Origin: Gracilinanus agilis
Taxonomy: Eukaryota
Direction of reading: 5' to 3'
Assembly (NCBI RefSeq): GCF_016433145.1
Contig: NC_058130.1
Coordinates: forward strand, 132,977,214-133,041,213
DNA length: 64,000 nt
How positions within the stretch are numbered: the first letter of the stretch is position 1; every line of letters begins with the position of its first letter. The notes beneath the pieces were generated by a model. That model was not told the DNA's origin, searched no databases, and worked only from the letters and a program-made list of their open reading frames with translations. The position numbers and the translations under genes are program-made. Shown in pieces: positions 9,440 through 64,000 of this stretch.

Positions 9440-10680
9440 AAAAAAAAAAAAATTTTATTTTATTTTTTCCCCAATTACATGTAAAAACAGTTTCCAACTT
9501 TTTTCAAAGAATAGTCTAGAATTCTCTCCTATCCTTCTCCTCACTCCCCCTTGAGATGGTAAGCAATCTCACATATTTTACATATTCCATCATATAAAAC
9601 ATTTTTTCCTTATTAATCCTTTTGTGAAAATAAACTCAAATAGAAAAAAGCTAAGAAAGCGAAAAAGTTTGCTTAAGTTTGGAAGTAGATGGCATTTTTT
9701 TTTATCATAAGTCCTTTGGGATAGTTTTGGATCATTGTATTCCTGAGAATAGCTATAATTCACAGTTGTTCAATATGAAGTATTCCTGTCACTGTACAAT
9801 GTTCTCCTACTTCTACTTATTTCACTCTGCTTCAGTTCATGTTAAGTCTTTCCAGGTTTTTCTGAGCTCCTCCTGCTTGTCTCTTACAGCCCAATAATAT
9901 TACATTACAATCATATACTATAACTTAGTCATTTCCCAATTGTATCGCTTCACTTTCTAAATCTTTACCACCCCCCAAAAGAGCTGCTGTAAATATTTTT
10001 GTACATATAGGTCCTTCCCCCCCTCTTTTTTTTTAATCTCTTTGGGATACAAACTTACAAATGCTATTTCTTGGTTAAAGCATATGTAATGTTTTATAGC
10101 CTTATGGACATAGTCCAAATTGCTCTTCTGAATGCTTGAATCAGTTCACAACTCCCGTATCTGTGTCTCATATTTCCCACATTCCCTTCAAGTTTTGTCA
10201 TTTTCCTTTTCTGTCATAATAGCCAGCATGATAGGTGTGAGGTGGTACCTAAGAGTTATTTGCATTTTTTAATTAATAGCAATTTAGAGCATTTTTTGCA
10301 TGAGAATAGAGTTTTAATTACTTTGAGAACTGCCTATTCATATCTTTTGAACATGTGTCAATTGGGAAATGACTAGTATTCTTATATATTCAACTAATTT
10401 TTCTATGTATTTAAGAAATAACGCCTTTATTAGAGACCTGTAAAAAAATGTTTTGCACTATTGTGATTACTATGTATTACTTTCCATTCTATTTACCCCT
10501 GTTTAGTTTCTCCCCTCCCCTCCCCCAATTTGCCCTTTTTTCTATCAGTTCCACCCCCATTCTCTTATTCCCTTCCCCTCCTACTTTTCTGTAGTGTAAG
10601 ATAGCTTTCTATACCCATTTGATTCTGTATATTCTTCCCTCATTGAGCCACTTCTGATGAGAGTTAGGTTCACACGCTCT
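9440..10680 (-). mobile_element. Older degenerate LINE-1 3' region
   Basis: Diverged paralogue of the L1 copies at 335-2610 and 5804-7188 (e.g. ataggtgtgaggtggtacctaagagtt at ~10231, gagaactgcctattcatatc). Boundaries approximate. Confidence 0.7.
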
Positions 10681-13019
10681 AGGAGAGCAGATTTTTAACT
10701 GGGGAGGGGGAAATGTAGAGGACCAGCAGAAATGGCAACAATTGCAGACAGTATAAGAGCAGGAAAGAAATTCCTAGACAAACAGAAGAATTCTAGGATG
10801 GAAGGTTCTAGACAGGAAAGGAATTCCTAGACAATGCCAAGTCATTAGATAAAAGAGATGAAGGAGAATAAGACTAGAACAATGATGCTGAGAGAGCCCC
10901 CCCCCCCCCAGACCTTCCTTTTCACCAGTTCCATAAATGACAAGTGGATCAAATTTTGGCAGTGTTGTCAACCCTAAAGCTTTCTATTTTCTGGAGACTC
11001 CAACCAGAGTAGTTCTATAAGATCAGAGATGAAACGGATTTCTGGGAAGGTACAATTCACAGGAGCCACAGAGTGAATCAGGGTTGATTTTCTTGAGCCT
11101 AAATGCTTTGACTTTTATTGGGATGGAATGGGAGGGCCTCCACTCTTGAGGAATCCCTGGAGAAGTGGGAAAGAATCATTAGGTTTAGGATAGATAGAGT
11201 GGCAGGCCTAGACTCAGGAGGACCTGGGTTCAAATATGATCTCAGGTATTTCCTAACTATGTGAACCTGGGCAAGCTACTTAACTCCTTTTGCCTAATGG
11301 TTAGGCCCTAACCTCTGTCACTTTTCTGTCTTAGAATTCATAAAGACACAAGTTTTTTGTTTTTGTTTTTTAATTATCTTATCAGTATATGCATAGGCTG
11401 TGAGCCTTTTACAGTTTGTATTTTCCATCAAGTTAAATGAACTAATCAACAAACATTTATTAATAAATAATAATTAATTATTTATTAACTAAATAATAAT
11501 TTATTAGTTAAATGATAATTAATTACTACTCTGTGTCAAGCTTTGTTCTTGGCATTGGGGATACAGGTAAAAGTCATGCTTGGAAAATTTATCACTCTCT
11601 CTGGCTGGCTCTATGACATGCATTTTATCTCCTCAAAATGTCTACCTAGATCATCTTGTCATCTGCCCTCCTGCTCCACACTTAACCTCTCCATCTATTT
11701 TCATCTCCTATTCTGGGCAAAGTAATTAAATCAATACTGCCATTGCTTCTGGGTGAATGGGCTGCCCTACAGATCCGCTTACCATCATAGTGACTCCACA
11801 AACCAAAACTTTCTTCCCTCAAGAGGATACTCTTGTCAGAGCCTCCCCTCTCTGTGGTAGATAAAAGTGAGTGAAGAGACTGGTGGTGCCCTCCCTTTCT
11901 TGAACTTCCCTTTTTAACTGTTCCCTTTATAGAAGACAGACCAGTGCACAGCAGAGTGGACCTGATTTGGGGGGAAGGGAAGCCTAACTTCCCTATTCTT
12001 GTCAAGGATACCCAGGTTCATCATCTTTTACTCTATTTTTCTTCCTCTCCGAAGTCTAATCCATTATCAAGTCCTGTTTCTTCCTCCATAATGTCTCATA
12101 TTCATCCCTTTCTCTCCATACTATCACCGCCCTAGTTCAGGCCTTCATCAACACTTGCCTGAATTATTTAAAGAACCACCTAATCATCATCCTTTTCTGG
12201 AGTTTCTCCAGTTTCTGATCCATTCTCTTCTACACAGCTGCCAAAGTGGTATTCTTAATGCTTAGTTCTGATCTGATCACATCATTTTCCTACTGATGTT
12301 TCCGTGTTGCTTCTAGGATCAAATACAATTTCCTCTGCTTCATATTTAAAGCTTTTTGATATATGGTCCAGATTACTTTTCTAGACTTATTACACATTTT
12401 TCTTCTCACACACTTGACCTCACAGCTAAACTGGCTTTCTTACCAGGTAGTTGTCCTCCATCTTTAATCTCTGTTCCTTTGTACACGTTTTCTTCCCTGC
12501 CCAGAGCGTTCTCCCTCCCTCTTTTCTTCTGCCTTTCAGAATCTCTGGTTTCCTTCCAGACAGAACTCAAACACCACCTTCTGTTGGAGGTCCTCCCCAG
12601 GCCCCCTTGCTGCCAAGTGCCTCCTTTCTAAGGTTTCCATCCTTCTGTCCTGTAAGTATCTTATATGTACAACATCTGCTTACTCTTAGTCTCATGACTA
12701 TGGGGCAGATTTATAAGTATGGTTCAGAGTCATAGTAATTCTGTGCTTGGTAGTCTAGTCATTAAATGACTCATGCTTATGCCCCCAGTACAGCTCTCTA
12801 ACAGTGGGCCAAGGTTAAGCTCCCAGCCCGGTGCTGTGAGTGATCTTCTTTTCTGTATGGTACACTTTGCACTTTCATGTGGAACCTAAAGGGATGCAAA
12901 GCAACATAAAGGCAGAGGCAACCACAGGCACTGATGAGAAATAACATAAAATCTGCCATGTGCATCCTTTAACAGAATACAAAAAATTAAGCAAAAGTAA
13001 GGCAGGAGAGGACTAGGGA

Positions 13020-13020
<1 letters not shown>

Positions 13021-13050
<30 letters not shown>
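13021..13050. repeat. (CA)n microsatellite
   Basis: 15 CA units read directly. Confidence 0.95.
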
Positions 13051-13051
<1 letters not shown>

Positions 13052-13966
13052 CTCTTTCTCCTTGATGGGTGGTTTGTTTCTTTCAGAGTTCCTGATAGAG
13101 TGCCCAAGATAAAAACAGAGTGACAAGCCTTTCCACTTATCCATTTAGAAGTCATCTCTCTTGATCTTGACGGAGGTAACTGCAGATGGAGAGAGGAGCC
13201 ATTTTGCCATGGTCTGTTGCATTACTGTCATGGGACAACCACCACTTCTCCCTTCTTTCCTCCTCCTTAAGAGTCCCCAAACTCTCCAACCTGTCTAAAG
13301 ACTGATCTCATTTTAGTTTTCTCTCTTCCCAAACTGAGAAGGAATGCCAATTCTAGGGCTATCCAGAACTCTTGCCAGAGGTTATTACATAGGAACATAT
13401 TTATATACACATCAAATGCCACCTTAAAGTGTAAGCTCCTTGAAGAGAGAGAGACTTCTAGTTGTTGTGGCAACTTGTATCCCCAGGGTTTAGTGCCTTT
13501 TACATAGTTGGCATTGAATGAATTCTTGTGGCCTGGTTGTTGCCTGCAGTGCTCCTCTGGAATCATTCATGGATGCCTGGGAGCAGAGGCTCATGGGATT
13601 TGTGAGTATGTGCCCACCCAGCCTGGAAGAAGAGGGTAGGCTTTGGAGGGGACATGTAAAGAATGGATATGCACTTGCTCACTTGGCCAGAGAGGAGAAT
13701 TTATGGACAATGCTCCTGAACCCCAATTTGCTGAATAGAAGTGGGAGGATTTGGATTATCTGGGCAACATAATCCCAAATTTAACCTTCTTATAAAGAAA
13801 GGAGATTTCCTGAGCAGAACCAGCCTTATGAGTGACCCCCACTTAAAGTTTGTATTATTTCAAAAGATCAGGCATCAGATTTTTCTAAAGAAAAATCCTG
13901 AAAAGCATCCAGCTTTGTTGAAATAAGAGGATCACCCACTTGGCCTCAGAAGTTGAAGGTCTAAGG

Positions 13967-14157
13967 CAGTGGTTCCCAAATTTTTTTTCCTACTGCCCCC
14001 TTTCCAGAAAAAATATTACTTAGTGCCCCTGTCACATACTATCACCGCCCCCTTACAGTTATTCACTGCCCCCAAATGCACCTGTGGCCACCACCACCTC
14101 CCCTGGATCACTGCAGCAGCCACCAGGGGGTGGTGGCACCCACTTTAGGAATCATTG
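13967..14157. mobile_element. hAT/Charlie-type non-autonomous DNA transposon (MITE, 191 bp)
   Basis: TIRs CAGTGGTTCCCAAA / TTTAGGAATCATTG. 8-bp TSD GTCTAAGG at 13959-13966 and 14158-14165. Confidence 0.85.
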
Positions 14158-14176
14158 GTCTAAGGCATATCTTCTT

Positions 14177-14757
14177 CTTCTTCTTCTTTTTTTTTTAATA
14201 TAAAACCTTACCTTCCATCTTAGAAACAATACCGTGTATTGGTTCTAAGTCAGAAGAGTGTTAAGGGCTAGGCCAGTGATGGGCAACCTTTTGAGGCTGG
14301 TGTGTCAAAATTCACCAAAAAACTGAGCATAACTTGGGTGGTATGTCACTTCGAGAAAAAAAGCATAATTTTACAATATTTATAGTTTAAATAACAAAAA
14401 TGTATAATTGTAATATATAACTGTATTTAATAAACCAAAATAGGTAAATTAATATAGGTTGTCATCTATAGCACACAGAGTGTCTACACTGCACTATAGC
14501 AAATGTTTCATCCTTGGCATTGTGCGGCCCCATACTTCTCTGTATGCAGCCGCATGTGGCTGCCTGTCATCGAAAATGGCTATGCATGTCAGTACTGACA
14601 TGAATGTCATAGGTTTGCCATCACTGGGCTAGGCAATGGGAGTTAAGTGACTTGTTCAGGGTCGCACAGCTGGGATGTGTCTGAGGCTAGATTTGAACTT
14701 AGGACCTCCCATCTCTAGACTTGGCTCTCAATCCACTGAGCCACTCAGCTGCCCCAC
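14177..14757 (-). mobile_element. Antisense SINE1_Mdo-like SINE interrupted by a hAT MITE
   Basis: SINE halves rejoin at GGCTAGGC. 17-bp TSD CTAAGGCATATCTTCTT at 14160-14176 and 14758-14774. Confidence 0.85.
14274..14626. mobile_element. hAT non-autonomous DNA transposon (MITE, 353 bp)
   Basis: TIRs CAGTGATGGGCAACCT / AGGTTTGCCATCACTG. Perfect 8-bp TSD GGCTAGGC at 14266-14273 and 14627-14634. Confidence 0.9.
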
Positions 14758-17080
14758 CTAAGGCATATCTTCTTAACTTAATGTCTATAGCCCTCCAAGA
14801 GATCCAGGAATAGACTTCAGGGCTTTTATGAACTTTTATGGGGGAAAAAATCTTTATTTTCATCATCCTCTAACTGAAATTTTACATTTCCTTACATTAT
14901 GAATTTAAAAAAAAAGACAATATTCTCAGAAGGTGCATATTAGCTTTACCAGGCTGCTAAAAGCATCCTTGACACAAAATAGGATAAGAACCCTTGGAAG
15001 ACCAAGGATACAACTTTTAGACAACAATAGAAAAATATAGAGGTAGCACAGCTTCTCAAGGTCTTCTCGTTCGCCTGTGAAAAGATGTGTTCAATGTTCC
15101 CTAGTAGGAGGTGGCCTAAATGGAACTAGGAACTAAGAACAAAGAGGAGGGAGGGGAACCTAACATAGCAGGTGATGATTTACTTGAAGGCCTGGGCCAG
15201 AGGTCATCTTCCTAAGAGAAGTTCCCTATTGGTTCATGCTAGTTAACCTGTTTTTGTTGTTGAACCAAGTCATGTTGCCTAAGCCAACTCCTTGCCTACA
15301 ATACCTAAAAAGATCTGATCCTATCTCCAACCTTGCCCTAGAGTTCTGATCTCTATCTCCAACTGCCTTCTTTATAGCTTCACCTGTATATCCTACCAGC
15401 CTTTCCAACTAAATCAATTCAAAATGTAAAATGTGAAATAATCTTATTATTGCTGCCTCCAAACTTGCCCATTCCCCAGTTTCCCTTCCGGTTGCTGGCA
15501 TCACATTTCTCCACTTATTCAGGTACATAACCCCTATCTTTTCAACTCTTCCTTCTTTCTCCCCTCATATATGCCATCAGTTGCCACATCCTGTAGATTC
15601 TACCTTATCTACATATCTACCATCCATTCCCTCCTTTTAACTCCTACTACAATCATTCTAGTTCACGTTGTCATCCCCTCTCAATTAGATTATTATAATA
15701 GCCTCCTATCTGTTTTTCCTTTTATTCTATCCTGCCAAAGCAATCTTCCTAACGTACCACTTTTTTTTGTCATACCTCTACTCAGAAAATATTCAGGCCT
15801 TCTCTTCTGCCTACTCAGTTGAGTATAAACTGGCATCCACTCCCTATTCCCTGACCCCACCAAAACACACATATTCAGTATTGTTCCAACCTAGTTTTCA
15901 GTCTTATTTCATGTTCTTTCCCTTCACGTAGTCTATATTCCAGCCAGGTTGTATAGAGAGCCAGCTTTATATTTTTGGGGGTCCTGAGTGGCTTTTAGTG
16001 GTGTTGGATTGAAAAGACCAGAAACAGAAAACTGAAAACAGCCAGACTAGCGGTTAGCCTATAGCTGCTCCAACTGCTATGGAGTTTAGAGTTTATTATA
16101 TGCTGGTTTCAAACAAAGAACACAGAGAAAGAATCACAGCTGTGAAGGGGTTACAAATCACATAAAAGAAAATCCTTGGAGGCTTCAAAGTAGAGATGGA
16201 ACAGGGACCAAGGCCGAATTCCAACCACCAATTAATAAGAAGTTAATTCTGAGAGCAGAAATATATTTCATAGAGATTTTTACTAATTGAGTCCTGTACT
16301 CTTGATTTACAGGATTGCACCTGGTCAGATAAGGTCTTGTCTAGCTTTGTCTGTTTCTGGCCTTGATTGTCTAAGTAATATTTTTTTGGAGTTCAGGCTT
16401 CTTGATTATCAAGGAGAGAAATTGTTAACTCAGTAGCTGCTGGTCTGCTAAGGACTCAAAGCTTTTCAATAAGTCTATAATGTTTTTCCAATAAGAAAAG
16501 GTATGGATCATAAAAGGGGTCAAAAGAGGGGTCTCAGATTTTTATCTATTCTCTTATTGGCTTCCCACAAGGTTGCACTTTACTTCTGGATATAGGTAAG
16601 GTAGGGAACTGTTTCAAAAAAAGGAAAAATAGCATAAGATGTGTACAGGGGATGGCAAGTAGTCCAGTTTGACTGGAATATAGAGTACAAGGAGAAAAGT
16701 GTTATTATATAAGGCTGGAAAGCTGGGAAGATACCAGATTATGGAAGCCCTTGAATACCTAGAGAAGGAGTTTAGACTTTTATTTGGCAACCAGAAGAAA
16801 CACATGGAAATTTTTGAACAGAAGGGTTACAAGATCAGATCAAATCAGATTGATACATACTGATTTGAATCCTGTATAGAGATTTCAGTCTTGGGAGGTG
16901 GATAAGATAATCAAAGGAAAGAGCCAAAGATAAACTCTCTGAGAATGATTTTATTAAAGGCCTGGAAGAAGAAAGATCAGCCTGGGATAGAAGCAGAGAA
17001 GGAACAGTTAAAAGTAGAACCTAGAGAGTGCTGTGTCACAGAAGGCGAGGGAGTGTCAAGCAGGAGGATTCTTTTTCTCC

Positions 17081-17083
<3 letters not shown>

Positions 17084-17114
<31 letters not shown>
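17084..17114. repeat. (TG)n microsatellite
   Basis: Perfect TG run read directly. Confidence 0.95.
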
Positions 17115-17117
<3 letters not shown>

Positions 17118-18714
17118 CAATAAGACCATTTATTCAGAACATAAATGCATAATAAAGCACATTCCTAGTAAATTTAGTTTCAATTCCCTTCCCCCCAGAG
17201 CAGTTTGGGTTTTGAGTGCCATCGAAACTCATGACTAGGATAGGGAAAGGTGAACTAATACCTTTGTTCCCTGGATTGCCCCTTGCAAGAAGGAGGATTT
17301 TCAACAGCATCAAATGCCCCAGAGATCAGAGACAAAGAGGAGGAGCTGGAAAGAAGGAAAAGGAGGAAACTGAGTAGTTGTTCCTTGAGCTCTGTACTTG
17401 CACGGGGTTGGAAGTATATTTCCAGACCTCTTTATCACTTCTATTTTTAAAAATTCTTAGCTTCCTTCAAAGTTTGGTTTAGGTGTCATCATCTACTGGA
17501 AACTTCCTGATTCAAGCAGCTTCCTTGAATGTTATGTTGTAATTACATATTTGTATACTTGTTATAACCAGTTAAATATAAATCTACTTAGGGCAATGAC
17601 TTCTGTTTTTGCTTTTGTGTCCACAACAGTGTCATGTACATACAGTAGATGCATTAATAAATGTTTGTTGAAATTAATTTAATCTCTAAGATCTGTTCCA
17701 TCTCCAATTTCATGGCTTACTTAATAGGCTAAACTGGCCTCTTCCTACATGGAAGCTTCAGCCAGGAAATATCAATCATGAACACTAGGAAATGATTTTT
17801 AAAAACACTCCATGTGGCAAAATAATTGCAGTCTTAAATGACAAGCTATCATACACTAAACTTCCCTATGCTAGTAATATAACCCCCACCCATGGCTCAT
17901 AGCAGATCTCTATCTAGTATTTTATTGAGTCACTAGGTAATTGCATGAAGAAGTTTAGAAGGGGGAAAAAAAACCACTTATCAAATTAGTAAGGGTTACC
18001 AAAATCCTGCCAGGCCTGTTGCATGTTCTCTGGTGTCTATTATATTAGCACCTGAGCCATGCCACTCTGAATTAGTATATCTGATCCAGAAGCAAATTGT
18101 GAGGGTTTTTGGAATCATGAAATACTATTTTGCACAGTCTCTGCTTTAGCACAAGAGAAAAACTCTGTTCTTGGTCATTTGAATAAATAAAAAATAATTT
18201 ACAGAAGCCCTGCAGATATGTTTTTATAACCCTATCCTATTGTACACTATGTTTTTTTGCCCTTTCAAGGAATTCAATGATAGGGAACAGTAATGGATAA
18301 ATAAACTAGAAGAAGGCTTCCAGTGCATTAAAAAAGGGCTTCAAGGAAAGATATTGGAAAGCTGGGAATAAGATACATGCATGAAGAGAAAGAGAGGATA
18401 AGTTACTTTCTTTCTAATCTTTACCTTCCTGTAATATTAGGTATCAATTCCAAGAGAGAAGACTGGCAAGGGCTAGGCAATTGAGATTAAGTGACTTGCC
18501 CATTGTCATATAGCTAGGAAGTGTCTGAGACCAGATTTGAATCCAGATTTGAACTTTCATCTCCAGATCTGGTTCTTTCTCCATGAAACCACATAGTTGC
18601 CCCTATGGGTTGTTTTCCACACACATTCCATGACAAGGGAGCAGTAATAATCAATAATCCCATGTATCAGAGGAAATAGCTATGAGGGGAAAAAATAGTA
18701 CGAGGGGAAAATTT

Positions 18715-19010
18715 TTTTTTTATTTTATTTTTTAGAAAAATTTTCCATGGTTACATGATTCATGTTCTTACTTTCCCCTTCACCCCCAACCCCGCCCTCC
18801 CCATAGTCGACTGGAATTTCCACTGGTTTTAACATGTCATCAATCAAGACCTATTTCCATATTATTGATAGTTGTATTGGTGTGGTCATTTTGAGTCTAC
18901 ATCCCCAATCATATCCGCATCAACCCATGTGTTCAAGCAGTTGCTTTTCTTCTGTGTTTCTACTCCTGTACTTCTTCCTCTGAATGTGGATAGCATTCTT
19001 TTCCATAAAT
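18715..19010 (-). mobile_element. LINE-1 3' end fragment
   Basis: T-rich tract followed by ttttccatggttacatgattcatgttcttactttcccc..., near-identical to 5810-6110. Confidence 0.85.
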
Positions 19011-20199
19011 CTAGGGGGAAAAAAACAGGTTGTAACATTTTGCTGACTAATGACATTAATTCATGATTTCTGTCAGTCTCCAGGTTTTCTGGTCACCCAT
19101 ATAGTTGAGTAGCCATCTAGATCTTTAAAAAAATTATTTACCCTCTGCTATTTTAAATTCTCCTCTGTGCATCTCTCTCAGCTCAAACTGCTCAGGGGGT
19201 AAAAAGCAAATAGACTGAGCTGAGATAAATACATAGAAGACGATAGTTCTAAAAGCACATTGTTCAGCTGAGGGTTGGGTGATATCACCTCTCTCCCCTT
19301 ATTCAATAAACTCCAATGGCTCCCTATTGCTTCCTGGATCAGACATGAAACCCTCTGGTGATCAAACCACTTCATAACCTAGACCCTACCTTTCCAGTCT
19401 TTTGACTCCAGGCTTTTTCTCCAGCTGTGTCCCATGCCAGAAACATCCCTTTTCATCTCTACCTCCTGCCTTCTCTGGCTTCCTTCAAATCCCAACTAAA
19501 TTCCATCTTCTATAGGAACCCAACCCAATCTTAATTCTAATGCCTTCTCTCTCTTAATCACTTCCTAATTGTTCTGAACAGAGCTCATTTGTACATATTT
19601 GTTTGCTTGTGTCTTCCCCATTAGACTATGAACTCCTTGAGGATAGGGATTGTTTTTTGCCTCATTCCATCTCCAGCACTTAACATAATGTCCAGCACAT
19701 AGTAGGTGTTTAATAAATGTTTAATGACTGGGCTGGAAAATTTTGCCAGACACATTCATTTTATATCTATGAAAAACGATGTCCTTCCAAAGATGACCCC
19801 TCAGTCGACCTCCACTTGGCTACCGGTAAACTAGGTAATCTGGAGTCAAGAGCATGTCACCAAAATGTCATAGGTTCACAGATTTAAAGTTGGAGAAAGA
19901 CCTTAAGAGATCATGTCGTCCAGCAAGCCCATTTTGCAGGGGGTAGGGAAAGTGGGGAGAATTGAGTCCCAGACCCATTAGGTTGCTTGTCCTAGGGCCT
20001 AAATCATCCAAAGCTGGGTTTTGAACTTGACCCCCTCCCAGGGTTCTTTCCTAGGCTAACTCTCGAAGTGGTGGCCTGAGATGTGCCTTTGGTCAAAGCC
20101 CTGAACTCTCTGAACCCCGCGATCTGCCCGTAGGTATGGCTGGGAGAGAGCTTCGCAGAAATCTATGCAGTTTTGCTGCCCGAACAGGCCTCGCCCAAT

Positions 20200-20654
20200 G
20201 TCCCTCTCGTCGGAAGGGACTACGGAACCGAAGTCCGCAGAACACAAAGGGAGGCGACTCGCCCAGAGCCGCACGCAGCGAGCTCCTATTGGGAGCCTTG
20301 GCTCCAGCTTCCCAGTTTGTGATGTGGAATACTAACCTCTGGACAGCGCCCGTCGCCCCCGGGTGCTTCCCCTCCCTTCTAAGCTCCCCAGAGACCTAGG
20401 CTTGAGGTGGGGGCGGTGGCCCGCGCGTAAGCAGCGCGTTGGGGCGGAGGTGTAGAGCGCAGGCCGCGCAAGCGCAGGAGCCTAGCCTAGCTACCCTCGA
20501 GCCGGGAGTCGAGAGCCAGGGCCTGACTCGAGTTGAGGGGCGGCCCCTGCGTGGGGAGCGTGCCGTGAGCGGCGGAGTGACGTGAAGGAGGGCGGGGCCG
20601 TCGCGCGCCTAGGCGGGACCCCGGGCGGAGCCGCGGGGAGGGAGGGGAGTGGAG
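20200..20654 (+). promoter_or_regulatory. MAPK3: MAPK3 CpG-island promoter / 5' UTR
   Basis: CpG-dense. Several GGGGCGG GC boxes, TGACGTG at 20578-20584 and GCGCA-type NRF1-like repeats, directly upstream of the ATG at 20655. Confidence 0.75.
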
Positions 20655-26957
<6,303 letters not shown>

Positions 26958-55121: not shown

Positions 55122-58053
<2,932 letters not shown>

Positions 58054-59249
58054 GTTTTTTCTTTAGCTGTACTGGTAGTTTCCTGCGTGAAGATAAAGTA
58101 TAAGCTAGATCTTTCTGTAGTCATGGCATAAGTTTGTGTAATTCAAGGTCAGATCATTCTTGCTACCCAACTTCTCTTTCCCCCTAGTCCATGTATTTCT
58201 ATTTGGACTTCCCCATTTCTAAACTTCTCTCTACCTTTCCTAAATCTAGGGTGGAGACCTAAGACCAGGGTGTGGTTGCTAGAGCAGAAAACAAGAACTG
58301 ATTAGTCCAGAAAACAATGAAAAGGCCAGGAAAAATAGCCTGGGCCCCTCTAGCACATTCTTTGTCAGCTAGAAGGTCACCTTGCTTATATACCTAAACC
58401 GGACCAATTAAATATCTTCTCCAATCTTCTCATTTGTAAAGAAGCAGACTCAGGTTAAAAAAAACAACCCTACCCTAGATAAAACAGAAAAAGGTATTTG
58501 ATAGCAAAGGTTAGTCACCATCAAGCAGACAAATTCAAATTTCCAGATCTAGAACAGTTTTCCTAAACTCCTGGTCTGTTTTCTTCCTTTATATCCCATT
58601 TCCTCAGTATGTCCCTCAAGGACATTTCAAGGTCAGGCTGCTCTCCCCTAACTGCTTGGGGGAAACTTCCACATAATGCGCAGATGGTGATAAGAAGCAT
58701 TAGGCCTATGATCCCTATGAAGGGCAAGAATTCAGCCCTCCATTTTAGGAGCTTTTTTTGGAAGACATTTCTGCCTTCCATCATTCCCAGTCAGCTGACT
58801 CCTACAGGAGCTAAGAAGTGGGAAAGCAGGAAGATAGACACGTTCCGGGAGGAGGATCCCAGGCTGTTTCCCTCTAGAATGCTCCCTTCCCTTATTCCAA
58901 CCACAGCTGCAGGCTGGGTGGTTCAAGGTCACTCCGATAAGAAAAACTATAGGATCAAAAGGAAGGCATTTATGGGAGCCGATAGCAAACCTCGAAGGGA
59001 ATTCCCCTTCAGACAGGTTTCCCTCCACCCACCTCCTACATTTTCCGAAGAGAGTTATTGCCCGGGCATACCAGGGAAACATATCCATGCCCATAGTTGT
59101 GTCCCTTCGCATCCCACCCCTGCCATGGAGGGGGGTGGGCGCCCTCCTCCCACCAGCAGCTCGGGCTGGGCTCTAGAACCCCCCCTCCCCCACTATCCCC
59201 CACCCTTGCGGAGAGCTGCTCTCGGGCGCGCCTTCCCCCGCATGACTCA

Positions 59250-59900
59250 GCCTTCCTCCTCGGCTGTCGCATTGCGCAGAAAGCAGGACTGCAGGCTGGG
59301 GTTTAGACGGGAAGCGGGGTGAGGGGACCAGCGACCTGCCCATTCCCAGCACCGCACTTCGTCCGAGGGGCAGCACGGGCTGGGGCACGCGCGCGGGGTC
59401 CTGTCGGGCGCTCCTCCTTGCCTCCGAGCCCGAGCTCTCCCAGCCCCAGTAGCCACGCTCACCTGGCCTCAGAGGTGAACTGCCGGTCTTGATGGTGAGT
59501 TTACCGGCAGGAAGAAGACCACTTATGGTCGGGAGCCGAACTTCTGCGCTTTCCGAATGCGAACGTTGCCTATTGAGCTCAGGAGGGGGCGGAGCGAAGG
59601 CGGAGTCTGACCATTTAAAGAGACCGCGCCACCTCCGGGGGGGGAGCTGGGGTGGAGTGGAGGGGGTGGAGAAAGCTATTTTCACCCAATCAGCGAGCGA
59701 GGATGCTAAAGTCGGGGGAGAGCCTTTGACCATAGGCAGCAGGGGCTCAAAAAAAAGGGAGGGGGAGAATCGTCGGCTCCGGCTCCGGCCCCACCTTCGG
59801 ACGTGACTGGAACCACATCCCTCCGGTCGGACCCCCCCTCCCCCAAAGCAGCTGCTCCCACCCCAGTTTAAGACCGCGTGACTCAGCCCCTATTTTGGTG
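59250..59900 (-). promoter_or_regulatory. ALDOA: ALDOA ubiquitous (H-type) CpG-island promoter and non-coding exon
   Basis: Donor CAG|GTGAGC at 59463/59462. TTTAAA at 59614-59619, CCAAT at 59686-59690, RCGTG at 59801-59805. Three-promoter ALDOA architecture is established in eutherians. Confidence 0.65.
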
Positions 59901-60764
59901 TAGGACGAGGGGTTAGAAGATGGGGGAAGAGTGTATAAGCAACAGACAGGAAAAAAATGGATTAATATGGAAAGGTGATGGGGAGACTCCAGGAAAACGA
60001 GAAGCAAGTAGGCTGTAGGGGAGAGGAGGAAACTATGGATAGGGGTGATTTAACCAAGCATTATTTCCTTGGGATTTTCCCCTCCCGGATCCATTCTGTA
60101 GGACAGAAACTGCCTGGAGAAGTGCCCTGACTTGTCCCCACCACTATGCCCATCCAGTTTCCTCTCCTCTGCATATTGCTACCTACAATAATAACCCTTT
60201 CAAACAATCTGGATCTCCCCCCAAGCTCCGGTCTTTCTTAAAGCTCAGCTCAAGCCCCCTCCCCGCCACCTGCCCCCCAGGTTCTTTACAATCTTTACAA
60301 TCCTCCAGCTAGCCAGGTGACCGCGCCCAGTCTTGCCGCGGCCAGCAGCAACAGGCCTCTACTGGCTAGAATGCGGAAACCTTCGGCTCTAGCCTGAGGT
60401 TCGGTGGCCCCAAGCCCCAAAGCATTAGGTAAACCGCAAGGCAGGTCCAAGGCCGGCGGGAAGGGGAAGAGGAAGGTCATTTTGTCCTTTGGATAACACC
60501 CACATTCCTTTCCCAAATACTGCACCATCTGCCTGCCAATCCAGTTTCCAAATAATATGTCCCCTTTGCTTCAGAATCTAGATTTCCCTAACTGATATTT
60601 TATATCTTTCTCACTTTACACATTTCCCTTACTCTTCTTATTAACCACTTTCTGCTCACCAGGTCTCATTTTTTACACCCTTTCGTTATTTTCTCCAGCC
60701 CAAGAATCCTGCCCATCCCCCAGCCCTTTTTTATCTGCTCAGCTATCCCCCACATGATACTCGC

Positions 60765-60944
60765 CTGAAAGGAGTCTGGAGGGTTAGACTCAGGCCTAGG
60801 CAGTGAGTGGTCAGGCAGAGCCTGGTTGGGATTATATAGTACTAGCCCCCCTCCTCTTGGAATTTTCCCGACCTTCTCTTGTGACCCCTGCCCTTTCCCC
60901 ACCCTTGCTATTCTGGCAGAGAACTATTTTTAGGGGAAACCTGA
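60765..60944 (-). promoter_or_regulatory. ALDOA: ALDOA muscle-type promoter and ~40-nt non-coding exon
   Basis: MEF3 TCAGGTTTC at 60936-60944, MEF2 CTATTTTTAG at 60924-60933, TATATAA at 60832-60838, donor CAG|GCGAGT at 60765/60764. Confidence 0.7.
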
Positions 60945-61389
60945 AGCCCCTGACATTCAAGCCAGGATGGGGCTTGCCACAGGGGAGGAAAGAAATTAGA
61001 GGAGGGGGAGTGACCAAGGGAAAAGCTTCTGCTAGGAAAAGAGAAGGAGCCAGTTGACAGAGCTAAAGCAGGCTGAGAAGAGAGGCATATGTAACCAATT
61101 CCCACTCACCAGCAGTTCTGAGGTGCCATCCTTTTCTATGGAAATCAGTCTTGCTGTTCTGCCTGCCAAAGGAGATACAGAGCTGAAATCTCAAGGATAG
61201 GAGACTAGAAACTAATAGGTGTTAACTCTCTCTCCCTTCTCCCAACCTTAGGCTTCTCCTAAGAGAAAATATCTCTGGTCCTTAATAGTGTCAGATATAG
61301 GTACCTATTTCAAGGCTGGGTACACCTATCTCTTGAAAGAATGGGGAGTGGACAAGTGGAGGGGGATAAGCCCCCATCTATTAAGTTAC

Positions 61390-61585
61390 CCTGAGGCAGC
61401 TAGATGGGTCAGAAGATAGAGTGCTGGGCCTAAAGTCAGGAAGACCCGAGTATGTGTAGACCCCAGACAAGCCATTTAACCTGTTTGCCTTGATCCACTG
61501 GAGAAAGGTATAGCAAGCCACTCCAGTATTTTTGCCAATAAAATCCCATGAACAGTATGGTCAGACATGACTGAACAACAAAAGT
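61390..61585 (+). mobile_element. Mar1-like SINE with RTE/BovB-type 3' tail
   Basis: CORE-SINE head plus tail ccactccagtatttttgcc...cccatgaacag...gtcagacatgactgaacaacaa. Confidence 0.75.
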
Positions 61586-62008
61586 CACCCTGAAATCCCA
61601 ACAACTGACCCAGGACCAAACTCTGCCTTGAATTCAACCTCTTCTGAGGAGAAATGAATGCTATCAACCCTAACTTGAGCCATATCCTTCCCTCCTGTCT
61701 ACAAGTGGGGGTAGAGGTGAGGCAGAAAGCAAGAAGTTACCCCACATGAGAACTATCCTGTCCTGGGTTTCCTCCAAGGTGCTGAATGCTTCTAGGGGTA
61801 ACTACTCTCTGCATTTCCCTAGGAGAGCCTGGTTCTTCTATGCTTAGGTCCAATGAAGACAAAAGGATGAGCCAGTCCTTGGGGGCAGGTGGCAAGCCAT
61901 TTTGAGTTCCCCTGGGATGGTGGTCCAGTTTCTAGGAAATGCTTCTGGGTTCTTGGAGTAGGCAGGTCCTCCAGAAGGCAGTGTTCCAATATCTTGAGCA
62001 AATGACTC

Positions 62009-62122
62009 TCATCTGAGCTTGATTTCAAAACAAAGGCAATTGAGGCTTTGGCACTCAGGAAGCTGGCAGGCACAGGCACAGTCACACAATGGACAGCATC
62101 TGGGGCACTGGGGAGCCCAACC
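62009..62122 (-). CDS. Terminal coding exon of an uncharacterised cysteine-rich small protein upstream of ALDOA (partial; earlier exons lie beyond the window). Probable orthologue of human LOC112694756
   Basis: Strong acceptor tttctctcttctccttcag at 62123, then 37 codons GWAPQCPRCCPLCDCACACQLPECQSLNCLCFEIKLR and TGA. 10 Cys. Orthology is recalled from the human locus and not aligned here. Confidence 0.8.
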   Translation of the reverse strand, partial: GWAPQCPRCCPLCDCACACQLPECQSLNCLCFEIKLR

Positions 62123-62244
62123 CTGAAGGAGAAGAGAGAAAGATGAAATAGGGTGTCCATGGTGAAAGGAAAGAGGATAAAGGGTGATGAAAGTTCAGAG
62201 GGAAGAAGTTCCTAGGAAGCAAAGTATGAAAATAGCTCCCTCAG

Positions 62245-62452
62245 GGGGGCAGCTAGGTGGCTCAGTGGATTAAGAGCCAGGGCCAGAGACAGAAGGTCCT
62301 GGATTCAAATCTGACCTCAGATACTTCCTAGCTATGTGACCCTGGGCAAGTTGCCTAACCCCCATTGCCTAGCTCTTACCACTCTTATGCCTTGTTAGGA
62401 ATAATACACAGTATTCATTCTAAGACAGAAGGTAAAAGGGTTTTTTTTTTTA
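62245..62452 (+). mobile_element. Full-length SINE1_Mdo-like SINE
   Basis: ggggcagctaggtggctcagtggattaagagcc...ggattcaaatctgacctcagatacttcctagc...ctaagacagaaggtaaaaggg. Confidence 0.85.
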
Positions 62453-64000
62453 AAGCCTTCTTTACAACAACCCTGTAAAATTGACAGTATAAGCATTATA
62501 ATCTGCATCATACACATTAGGAAACTGGGGTTCAGAGAGGAAAAATGCCTTGCCCTTGCTTCTAGAAAAAAGCAATCTATAAGCAGGCCCCTCTACCTCT
62601 TCTTCCTACTTACCTCTCAATTGGTTCCAGTTTGGGCTTCTACCTTCCAAACTCAAGTAAAATGTCTTTTCTCCAGGGCAACATAACAATCATGGGGAAG
62701 TCTCCCAGACCTAATTTTACCCTAAGCTTCAGTCCAGCATCACCATTTGCTTGTTGGACATATCTCTAATTCTTTGTACTTTATGTCTCCCAACCTCAGT
62801 ACCTCTAAAACAGCATTCATTATTTCCCCACTAAACCAACCTCCCCCCACCGAAGCTTCACCATTTCTGTTGAGGAAACAATCACCTTTCCAATAATCTA
62901 GGTGTGCAACTTGGGTGTCATCCTTGACTCTTCCCTCTCCTTCAGCCCCTGTATCCAGTCAGTTGCCAATTCTTATTAATCCTACCTCCCCCTCTCATAG
63001 CTGTCCCCTTCCATTCCCCATATGGCCACAGTCTCACTTTAGGGCTTCTTCATTTGTCACCAGGACTACAGCAATAACCTGCTATTTGGATTCCCAGGAT
63101 ATCTCCTCTCCAATCTATGCTTCAAAGAGCTGCCAAATAATTTTTTAAAGCATAAGTCAGACCACATCACTGCCCTACTCAAGGACCTTCAGTGATTCCC
63201 TATATCCTTTTAGAGTAAAATGGAAACTCCTCAGGTAGCACCTTCAAGACCTTTACGACCTGCCCCTGCCCCCTACCTTTCTAGACTACTACCCGTTACT
63301 CTCTATTCTCTAACTGGCCAGCTTCCTTACTGTTCCTTCAACTCTGTGTCCCATCTGCCAAGTTTGTGCCTGGGTCCAGGCTCCCTATCTTAGCTAGAAT
63401 ACTTGTCTTCCTCACTTCTGCTTCTTCCTTCTCTTAGCTTTCCTCAAGGCTCATGTCATGAACAAGACATCTTCTATGGGAAATCATTCCTGGTTCTCCT
63501 AGGTGGTAGTGTTTTTTTCTCTTTCTCAAACCCATCAGGTATTACTTTTCTGTTTCCTCATCATTTCCCCTAAGCAGAGTATAAATTTCTTAAGGTCATG
63601 GACTCTTTTTTGTCTTTGTATTCTCAGCCCCTGGCATGGTGCTGTATAAAGCATCTATCACTCAGGCAGTTAACATTTGTTGGATTGGATACAATTGTAA
63701 GGAGGGTTAAGAAAACTGGACTCATATATTTTGATTTGAAGTCTAATGCTATTTCCTTTTTGCTATGGAGCTTTTAAAGGATGGTGGGGAGAGGAGAGTT
63801 GATATATATATAAAGACCAAAATAGCAATGTGTTCTTCCATGCCTATAGTTTTAAAAATAGATTCTCATGTATAATCTATATCAAATTACTTGCCTTCTC
63901 AGTATGGGTAAGAGCGGAGAGAGAGAATCTGGAATTGAACATTTTAAAAAACAAAATTTTTTACACATGATTTGAAAAAATAAAATATTTGAAAATAAAA

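What the first reader, a model, noticed from the sequence alone, without database searches (positions are those of the whole stretch)
62009..62122. Hidden cysteine-rich micro-protein exon immediately upstream of ALDOA
Seen: a long polypyrimidine tract and CAG acceptor (62123) opens a 114-nt exon on the minus strand. It encodes GWAPQCPRCCPLCDCACACQLPECQSLNCLCFEIKLR* (10 Cys in 37 aa, with CCxxCxCxCxC and CxxxxCxC clusters). The ORF track reports only a different, meaningless frame here (61819-62160). Recalled, not aligned: the human locus has an uncharacterised gene (LOC112694756), formerly treated as ALDOA 5' UTR, whose product ends in a nearly identical peptide after an N-terminal hydrophobic segment. 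Inference: conservation from marsupial to human implies a functional small protein, plausibly palmitoylated or metal-binding and membrane-associated, with no function known to me.
Basis: partly seen in the sequence, partly recalled or inferred. Interest (0 to 1): 0.85.

Follow-up and report, generated by a model that had tools for sequence, protein, structure and literature searches.

The report
Conserved cysteine-rich membrane microprotein exon upstream of ALDOA
This is a real protein-coding exon: the last coding exon of a small, very old, cysteine-rich membrane protein gene (human LOC112694756) just upstream of aldolase A, already in gene catalogues but with no known function.

Summary
Window 62012-62122 (minus strand) encodes 37 residues with 10 Cys, then a stop at 62009-62011. 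It follows a pyrimidine tract and an AG acceptor at 62124-62123.

- RNA contigs from two related species start exactly at 62122. They are joined in frame to an upstream exon ending DACCPQPMEA, which is the end of the preceding exon in marsupial orthologues.
- dN/dS against whale and mouse-like sequences is 0.03, with synonymous sites near saturation.
- The peptide is 100% identical to opossum, 89% to human (A0A2R8YDM7) and about 70% to turtle and gecko.
- A profile search finds the family in amphibians, fishes, sharks, amphioxus and an annelid, with conserved intron positions.

The protein has a short N-terminus, one transmembrane helix and a roughly 90-residue tail with about 20 Cys. It matches no Pfam family and no solved structure.

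- The exon is not 114 nt. It runs on to about 61757 and is spliced to a 53-nt exon (61162-61110) towards ALDOA.
- The gene is not "hidden". RefSeq models exist, often misnamed as keratin-associated proteins.

Its function is unknown. I infer an N-out membrane protein whose cytosolic tail binds metal and/or is S-acylated.

The parts
62123..62160 (-). 3' splice site of the intron before the exon: pyrimidine-rich tract and AG acceptor (AG = 62124-62123).
   Evidence: Read directly from the sequence. RNA contigs of four runs from two related species begin to match exactly at 62122. The whale orthologue has the same acceptor context.
62012..62122 (-). Last 37 codons of the Cys-rich membrane protein (orthologue of human LOC112694756). 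The preceding intron is phase 0.
   Evidence: Translation. 100% identical to the opossum protein P0087, 89% to human and 92-97% to eutherian representatives. dN/dS is 0.03 against whale and mouse-like sequences. The one listed difference from related marsupials, at 62030, is a synonymous TGT>TGC change.
62009..62011 (-). TGA stop codon.
   Evidence: Substitutions in related species resume right after it, at 62008 and 62007. Alignment with the mouse-like transcript ends at 62006.
61757..62008 (-). Non-coding remainder of the same exon, forming the spacer between the Cys-rich ORF and the ALDOA leader.
   Evidence: RNA contigs X4, X8, X11 and X16 cover 61757-62122 as one block with 16-21 differences in this part. 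There is no detectable similarity to the eutherian transcript. In the window the donor position reads CAG|GATAGT, which is not GT. The nearest GT donor-like site is at 61740.
61110..61162 (-). 53-nt downstream exon to which the Cys-rich exon is spliced in related species. It is an ALDOA 5' leader exon and contains an ATG at 61129-61127.
   Evidence: The loose end at 61757 in X8, X11 and X16 matches 61132-61161 with 2 mismatches; 0 matches are expected by chance. X4 shows a joint from 61161 to 61757. Acceptor ...tttggcag| and donor |gtgagt are read. The homologous small exon in mouse-like contigs L002/L003 leads into the ALDOA ATG.
58053..58082 (-). Start of ALDOA exon 2 (acceptor AG 58084-58083) with the ALDOA ATG at 58053. 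Given as context for the downstream cistron.
   Evidence: Translation reads [16 protein letters not shown].... Sequence. Downstream exons hit Pfam Glycolytic. The loose end of the abundant exon at 59462 matches the start of this exon.

Best explanation
Shown. Window 62012-62122 (minus strand) is the final coding exon of the marsupial orthologue of the gene annotated in human as LOC112694756 (mouse Gm57854, zebrafish si:ch211-198p11.6). The full protein is about 140 aa in marsupials and is built from three coding exons:
- exon 1: a short Ser/Thr/Pro-rich N-terminus plus one transmembrane helix;
- exon 2: a Cys-rich stretch ending ...LDACCPQPMEA;
- exon 3: the stretch in this window, carrying the family's most conserved motif (CP-x-CDCAC-x-CQ-x-P-x-C-x-S-x-NC-x-CFE-x-K) at the extreme C-terminus.
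Exons 1 and 2 lie beyond the window's end. The exon is transcribed and spliced at 62122 in related species, and it is under strong purifying selection at the protein level. In mammals the gene sits head-to-tail a few kb upstream of ALDOA (3-4 kb in the window, opossum and whale). Its last coding exon is spliced onward into ALDOA leader exons, so it is the upstream cistron of long ALDOA transcripts.

Inferred. By the positive-inside rule the N-terminus faces out and the roughly 90-residue tail, with about 20 Cys, is cytosolic. In that reducing compartment the tail most likely works in two ways. The Cys next to the membrane are S-acylated. The invariant C-terminal CxCxC/CxxxxCxC clusters hold metal ions (Zn or Cu) in a small metal-dependent fold that serves as a membrane-anchored binding or sensing module. 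I put about 0.95 on the identification and about 0.4 on this mechanism.
For: Identity and expression:
- Only proteins ending in this peptide are found among 1.84e9 representatives.
- Marsupial, monotreme, reptile and coelacanth orthologues align over the whole exon.
- RNA contigs of two related species join ...DACCPQPMEA in frame to 62122.

Selection:
- There are 15 synonymous against 5 non-synonymous differences to whale. dN/dS is 0.030 (whale) and 0.033 (mouse-like).
- Only 62122-62006 aligns with the eutherian transcript.
- Against related marsupials there are 1-3 differences in the 114 nt of CDS and 19-21 in the adjacent 252 nt. Fisher p is 0.002 for the listed sites and 0.05 in the worst case.

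Family depth:
- A profile search gives 117 hits, including amphibians, lungfish, sturgeon, teleosts, ray, chimaera, amphioxus (1.5e-24) and Capitella (1.5e-14).
- Intron positions are shared from amphioxus to mammals.

Synteny:
- Aldolase lies downstream on the same strand in the window, opossum, aardvark and whale.
- A TLC-domain gene lies upstream in turtle, matching the human order TLCD3B-LOC112694756-ALDOA.

Read-through:
- Junction from 61757 to 61161.
- Mouse-like contigs run from the CDS to the ALDOA ATG.
- There is no AATAAA/ATTAAA between the stop and the ALDOA ATG in the window or in whale.

Topology:
- The transmembrane helix is predicted with pLDDT 86-98.
- The N-terminal flank has 0-2 K/R and an R directly follows the helix.
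Against: - No RNA data exist for the window's own species. The splice evidence comes from relatives about 95% identical.
- In the window the donor after the exon is not GT (CAG|GATAGT), so the onward splice may differ in this species.
- Logan contigs are short-word assemblies and cannot prove that one molecule carries both cistrons.
- No proteomic or ribosome-profiling evidence was examined.
- The tail is predicted at pLDDT 41-51, and no metal-binding or acylation family matches. The mechanism rests only on composition, spacing and topology rules.
- The 91-aa isoforms that lack the transmembrane exon would not be membrane-anchored.
Confidence: 0.85

Rival explanations
1. The segment is a non-coding 5' leader exon of long ALDOA transcripts, and the Cys-rich frame is a chance ORF or a purely regulatory upstream ORF whose peptide does not matter.
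For: The exon is spliced on to ALDOA leader exons. No poly(A) signal lies before ALDOA. Some databases file the product under ALDOA.
Against: dN/dS is 0.03 with near-saturated synonymous sites. Amino-acid conservation reaches amphioxus and an annelid, where no aldolase gene is adjacent. In sturgeon the aldolase gene is convergent, so the ORF cannot be its leader there. Conservation stops at the stop codon.
Confidence: 0.03
2. It is a keratin-associated, SMCP-like or late-cornified-envelope-like soluble structural Cys-rich protein, as many automatic RefSeq names say.
For: Source names such as 'keratin-associated protein 10-10', 'sperm mitochondrial-associated cysteine-rich protein' and 'Mst84Db'. 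High Cys content.
Against: No member hits any keratin, SMCP or other Cys-rich Pfam model, even at E<=10. All full-length members have a confident transmembrane helix. The gene is single-copy with fixed synteny next to ALDOA, not in a KRTAP cluster. The names conflict with one another.
Confidence: 0.02
3. The protein has the opposite topology or is secreted-facing. The Cys-rich tail would then be extracellular or luminal and folded by disulfide bonds into a small knotted ligand or receptor-like domain, rather than binding metal or carrying acyl chains in the cytosol.
For: About 20 Cys with invariant spacing and conserved non-Cys residues would also suit a disulfide-rich mini-domain. AlphaFold gives a weak beta-hairpin at the C-terminal motif.
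Against: There is no signal peptide-like N-terminus ahead of the helix. The N-flank has almost no K/R, and R directly follows the helix in all lineages examined, which predicts N-out, C-in. The nearest feature-space neighbours are N-out small membrane proteins such as M2, NB, CoV E, SMIM5 and TMEM52, though this is a weak lead only.
Confidence: 0.1

Closest known systems
Human LOC112694756 (UniProt A0A2R8YDM7) and its annotated orthologues: mouse Gm57854, rat LOC103691235, opossum XP model named 'sperm mitochondrial-associated cysteine-rich protein', zebrafish-type si:ch211-198p11.6
   Same: Same C-terminal peptide (100% to opossum, 89% to human), same phase-0 intron before it, same position upstream of ALDOA, same exon plan.
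   Different: Nothing of substance; this is the orthologue. Only the last coding exon lies inside the window. No function is published for any member. The library holds the gene name only in lists of 16p11.2 genes (checked in one paper) and an expression table.
Small N-out single-pass membrane proteins with acylated juxtamembrane Cys (influenza M2 and NB, coronavirus E, SMIM5, TMEM52)
   Same: Short ectodomain without a signal peptide, one helix, a basic residue and Cys directly after the helix. They are the nearest named neighbours in language-model feature space.
   Different: Scores are only 0.5-0.76, below the level that indicates kinship, and there is no sequence homology. None has a 90-residue tail with about 20 Cys.
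Metallothioneins and I-mfa (MDFI/MDFIC) Cys-rich domains
   Same: Dense CxC, CC and CxxC spacing in a cytosolic, low-complexity, secondary-structure-poor segment. From my own knowledge, MDFI-type domains are Cys-rich and lipidated at membranes.
   Different: No Pfam hit to metallothionein or MDFI models. The Atlas MDFI score is 0.46-0.49. The family has its own invariant non-Cys residues (D, A, Q, P, S, N, F, E, K).
Mammalian dicistronic or read-through gene pairs in which a small ORF sits in the leader of a housekeeping mRNA
   Same: The stop codon is followed by splicing into the leader and start codon of the next gene. No poly(A) signal lies between them.
   Different: Single-molecule linkage is not shown. 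The family is far older than the arrangement: convergent in sturgeon and unlinked in amphioxus and Capitella.

Membership tests
LOC112694756 / si:ch211-198p11.6 family (no Pfam entry) | Extreme C-terminal motif CP-x-CDCAC-x-CQ-x-P-x-C-x-S-x-NC-x-CFE-x-K(L/M)(R/L) | tested here: met
   Every invariant column of alignment A1 is present in the window peptide.
LOC112694756 / si:ch211-198p11.6 family (no Pfam entry) | Phase-0 intron directly before this exon, joined to the exon that ends ...LDxCCPxPxEA | tested here: met
   The loose end at 62122 in four RNA runs of related species reads DACCPQPMEA in frame. Exon maps were made in whale, turtle and amphioxus.
LOC112694756 / si:ch211-198p11.6 family (no Pfam entry) | N-terminal exon with a single transmembrane helix, and a middle Cys-rich exon | not testable with these tools
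   tblastn finds neither exon in 62123-64000. The opossum gene spans 5 kb, so they lie beyond the window's end. They are present in all full-length marsupial orthologues.
LOC112694756 / si:ch211-198p11.6 family (no Pfam entry) | Position next to ALDOA (same strand, upstream, in mammals) | tested here: met
   The stop at 62009 lies 3.96 kb upstream of the ALDOA ATG at 58053. The spacing is the same in opossum (3951 bp). Also seen in aardvark and whale.
LOC112694756 / si:ch211-198p11.6 family (no Pfam entry) | Purifying selection in this reading frame | tested here: met
   dN/dS is 0.030, 0.033 and 0.066 in three pairwise comparisons.
Keratin-associated proteins (KRTAP5/10; Pfam Keratin_B2 models) | Match to the keratin-associated Cys-rich repeat models | tested here: not met
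   hmmscan of 14 family members at E<=10 gave no keratin family.
CYSTM (PF12734), MDFI/I-mfa (PF15316), metallothionein | Match to the family profile | tested here: not met
   No Pfam hits. Atlas feature scores are 0.46-0.59 only. A profile search of solved structures returned nothing.
Dicistronic / read-through unit with ALDOA | One mature mRNA carrying both the Cys-rich ORF and the ALDOA ORF | tested here: inconclusive
   The junction from 61757 to 61161 is seen in relatives. Mouse-like Logan contigs reach the ALDOA ATG. No poly(A) signal lies between. However, contigs are assembled from 31-letter words, and the window's own donor is not GT.

The most novel reading that the evidence does not exclude
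An ancient bilaterian membrane microprotein was captured in mammals (possibly earlier in tetrapods) as the upstream cistron of long ALDOA mRNAs. It would then be co-transcribed with a glycolytic enzyme and translationally coupled to it. Its Cys-rich cytosolic tail would act as a metal- or redox-sensitive membrane anchor or regulator linked to glycolysis. As a dosage-sensitive but overlooked gene in the human 16p11.2 deletion/duplication interval, it might contribute to that syndrome.
Probability: 0.12. Interest if true: 0.8.

Novelty: already known. Interest (0 to 1): 0.45.

Why it matters
The gene exists in RefSeq, Ensembl and UniProt, so finding the exon is not a discovery.
- The family has no Pfam entry, no solved or confidently predicted fold and no functional paper in the library searched.
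- Yet its C-terminal motif is kept from annelid and amphioxus to mammals, at dN/dS of about 0.03.
- In mammals it appears to ride on ALDOA transcripts.
- It lies inside the human 16p11.2 copy-number interval, where it is usually just a LOC number in gene lists.
- Many automatic names (KRTAP10-x, SMCP, Mst84Db, LCE-like) are wrong and hide the family.

It is a well-defined target for a first functional study.

Tried and rejected
- Pfam on the 37-mer and on 14 family members: nothing relevant.
- Profile search of solved structures: no hit.
- AlphaFold2 with 20- and 50-sequence alignments: only the transmembrane helix is confident and the tail stays at pLDDT 41-51. I ran no fold search, because matches to a low-confidence model would be meaningless.
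- ESM Atlas on the 37-mer, the full protein and the tail alone: only the family's own clusters score high. An arthropod cluster at 0.92 was not followed up. Named families score 0.76 or less.
- tblastn for the upstream exons in 62123-64000: absent, so they lie off the window.
- The first read-laying run was swamped by two repeats (62237-62433 and 61252-61645). A second call restricted to 61650-62236 gave the clean junctions.
- Genomic DNA for opossum and aardvark could not be fetched because the files were too large. Several RefSeq proteins were not on record. The codon analysis therefore rests on whale, a mouse-like transcript and turtle only.
- Literature searches for LOC112694756, ENSG00000285043, AC093512.2, Gm57854, LOC103691235 and ch211-198p11.6 gave gene lists or nothing. 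AC093512.2 is used inconsistently across papers, so I did not rely on it.
- An in-frame N-terminal extension of ALDOA from the ATG at 61129 was considered and rejected. A TAG lies four codons upstream of the ALDOA ATG in its frame.

Full report
**1. The observation**

Upstream lie a pyrimidine-rich tract and AG at 62124-62123.

The mechanical ORF list shows a 113-aa ATG ORF in a different frame (61819-62160) and only a 26-aa TTG fragment of the correct frame.

The frame is not a composition effect. It is the only stop-free 37-residue stretch with 10 or more Cys in all six frames of the window. None occurs in 30 block shuffles, where the maximum was 8 Cys.

**2. Is it an exon?**

No RNA run of the window's own organism was offered. 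The only full holder of the stretch, X7, is of unrecorded type and is probably the DNA run the assembly came from. RNA contigs of two related organisms, about 94-95% identical, were laid on the stretch.

In four runs one contig block covers exactly 61757-62122 and continues on both sides with sequence unlike the window.
- Beyond 62122 the extra letters, read on the minus strand, translate in frame as DACCPQPMEA directly followed by GWAPQ.... This is the end of the preceding coding exon in the Sminthopsis, Monodelphis and Petaurus proteins.
- The acceptor, the phase-0 intron and the reading frame are therefore confirmed by transcripts.

Within the 114-nt coding part only one difference from these relatives is listed. 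It is at 62030, a third-position TGT>TGC change (Cys to Cys). The remaining 252 nt of the block carry 16-21 differences, beginning at 62008 and 62007, immediately after the stop. Sites near block ends are not listed by the tool. Allowing for that, Fisher p is 0.002 for the listed sites and 0.05 in the worst case.

**3. What it belongs to**

A phmmer search of the 37-mer against 1.84 billion representatives returned 12 hits.
- Ten of the 12 were fetched, and in all ten the match ends within one residue of the protein's C-terminus. P0009 and P0011 were not examined; P0011 matches at residues 352-378 of a 1390-aa protein.
- Six hits are 92-97% identical (eutherians), two are about 73% (tortoise, gecko) and two are 60-71% (teleosts).
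- Cluster look-up gives the names 'LOC112694756 homolog', plain 'uncharacterized protein', and a scatter of misleading automatic names such as KRTAP10-x, SMCP, Mst84Db and 'elongation factor Tu'.
- Human A0A2R8YDM7 (87 aa) is a member. Its last 37 residues are 33/37 identical to the window peptide.

A word-indexed search added marsupial (Sminthopsis, Monodelphis, Notamacropus, Petaurus), echidna, alligator and coelacanth proteins. The window peptide is 100% identical to the Monodelphis C-terminus.

The gene list order TLCD3B, LOC112694756, ALDOA in a 16p11.2 paper (PMC11354020) matches what is seen here:
- aldolase exons on the same strand downstream in the window;
- an aldolase gene 3951 bp downstream in opossum;
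- a same-strand downstream aldolase in aardvark and whale;
- a TLC-domain gene upstream in a turtle.

**4. Protein-level selection**

Terminal-exon codons were taken from the window, a fin-whale genomic locus (L001) and a mouse-like transcript contig (L002).

| Pair | Synonymous | Non-synonymous | dN/dS |
|---|---|---|---|
| Window vs whale | 15 | 5 | 0.030 |
| Window vs mouse-like | 13.5 | 3.5 | 0.033 |
| Whale vs mouse-like | 9.5 | 3.5 | 0.066 |

The proportion of synonymous differences (pS) is 0.6-0.7 between marsupial and eutherian. A blastn of the mouse-like transcript against 9 kb of the window aligns only 62122-62006. That is the coding part plus three bases. The conservation is of the peptide, not of a nucleotide element.

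**5. Depth of the family**

A profile of 20 full-length members found 117 proteins. They include salamander, caecilian, frogs, lungfish, sturgeon, bowfin, many teleosts (named si:ch211-198p11.6), a ray and a chimaera. Amphioxus scores E 1.5e-24 and the annelid Capitella 1.5e-14. No bird sequence appeared among the hits.

The alignment shows a common plan: a short N-terminus, one hydrophobic helix followed by R-(Q/H)-C-L-L, a Cys-rich middle, and the C-terminal motif, which is the best-conserved part.

Exon maps show the same intron after the '...CLL' that follows the helix in turtle and amphioxus, and probably in Capitella, where the first block ends at the aligned residue. In whale the boundary was not resolved by this map; the skipped-exon isoforms place it there. 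The intron before the terminal exon is clear in turtle and consistent in whale. In amphioxus one more Cys-rich segment lies between the second block and the terminal exon.

Isoforms that skip the middle exon (87 aa, as in the human entry) or that start inside it and lack the helix (91 aa) are on record.

**6. Relation to ALDOA**

In the related marsupials the exon is internal. Its 3' loose end matches window 61132-61161 with two mismatches and no chance expectation. There a 53-nt exon (61162-61110) has a good acceptor and a GTGAGT donor. One run also shows the joint directly.

Mouse-like Logan contigs L002 and L003 contain the complete 176-aa ORF, its stop and about 390 nt of spacer. A splice then leads into a small exon that shares an 11-nt stretch (AGACTGATTTC) with the window's 53-nt exon, followed by a leader ending in CACC-ATG-CCCC. 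I read this as the ALDOA start, by position and from my memory of the mouse sequence, not from an alignment.

No AATAAA or ATTAAA lies on the gene strand between the stop and the ALDOA ATG, either in the window or in whale. The turtle has one 162 nt after its stop.

Four caveats apply:
- Contigs built from 31-letter words do not prove single molecules.
- The window's own donor position reads CAG|GATAGT rather than GT, and the relatives' sequence at that site could not be read.
- A stop codon 252 nt ahead of an exon junction would ordinarily invite nonsense-mediated decay.
- The arrangement is younger than the gene. In sturgeon the adjacent aldolase gene is convergent. No aldolase lies within 10 kb in amphioxus or Capitella.

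**7. How it probably works (inference)**

AlphaFold2 predicts the helix with confidence (residues 25-56, pLDDT 86-98). It gives nothing usable for the tail (pLDDT 41-51) with either 20 or 50 sequences.

The N-flank has 0-2 Lys/Arg and no signal peptide-like segment. An Arg directly follows the helix in every lineage checked except sturgeon, where it lies a few residues further on. The tail is 87-95 residues with 19-22 Cys. The positive-inside rule then puts the tail in the cytosol, where clustered thiols are either acylated or hold metals.

Invariant spacing, together with invariant non-Cys residues (D, A, Q, P, S, N, F, E, K), argues for a specific small fold or binding surface rather than a mere acylation patch. 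Failure to fold in silico is common for metal-dependent mini-domains.

My best guess is S-acylation next to the membrane plus a metal-thiolate C-terminal module. I give it about 0.4. A disulfide-knotted extracellular domain is the main structural rival, at about 0.1.

No Pfam, PDB or Atlas-named family supports membership anywhere.

**8. Novelty and verdict**

The exon is the orthologue of an annotated gene, including in marsupials, so the class is 'already known'. The library holds no functional paper. The name occurs only in 16p11.2 gene lists and expression tables.

The points worth carrying forward are:
- the bilaterian age of an unnamed family;
- its strong constraint;
- the apparent coupling to ALDOA transcripts in mammals;
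- the misleading names in public records.

Noticed in passing
window 61755-61758 (minus strand): Related species splice the Cys-rich exon to the next exon here, but the window reads CAG|GATAGT, so there is no GT donor. The nearest GT donor-like site (GGG|GTAACT) is at 61740. Either the relatives differ at this base or this species splices differently.
   Followed up: partly
window 61110-61162 (minus strand): The 53-nt ALDOA leader exon contains an ATG at 61129-61127 in good context (AAGGATGG). It cannot extend ALDOA in frame, because a TAG lies four codons before the ALDOA ATG, so it would be a short upstream ORF.
   Followed up: partly
window 58054-62008 (minus strand); L001 12782-16306: No AATAAA or ATTAAA lies on the gene strand between the Cys-rich ORF stop and the ALDOA start codon, in the window or in fin whale. 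A turtle orthologue has one 162 nt after its stop.
   Followed up: yes
window 62237-62435 and 61252-61645: Two interspersed repeats (SINE-like) sit in the flanking introns. RNA-run contigs pile up on them at word depths of thousands to over a million, and they swamped the first read-laying run.
   Followed up: no
window 60831-60837 (minus strand): A TATATAA box lies about 280 nt downstream of the 53-nt exon, in a stretch with low-depth RNA contigs (60460-61156). It may be an internal ALDOA promoter, such as the muscle-type one.
   Followed up: no
window 59462-59628 (minus strand): An abundant ALDOA first exon lies in the CpG-rich region, with depth 1409 in one run. Its loose end at 59462 matches the start of ALDOA exon 2 at 58082.
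   Followed up: partly
L007 (Acipenser ruthenus) 10001-23751: The sturgeon orthologue is next to an aldolase gene but tail-to-tail (convergent). The linkage with aldolase is therefore older than the same-strand arrangement seen in mammals.
   Followed up: partly
family-wide: No bird protein is among the 117 profile hits, although alligator, turtles and squamates are present. This could be a loss or a gap in GC-rich assemblies. An arthropod Atlas cluster scoring 0.92 was also not examined.
   Followed up: no
public records of orthologues: Automatic names for this one gene include KRTAP10-2/-10/-11, KRTAP5-x, KRTAP4-3, SMCP, Mst84Db, LCE-like proline-rich protein, delta homolog 2, agouti signaling protein, G-protein gamma 4 and elongation factor Tu. 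All appear spurious.
   Followed up: partly
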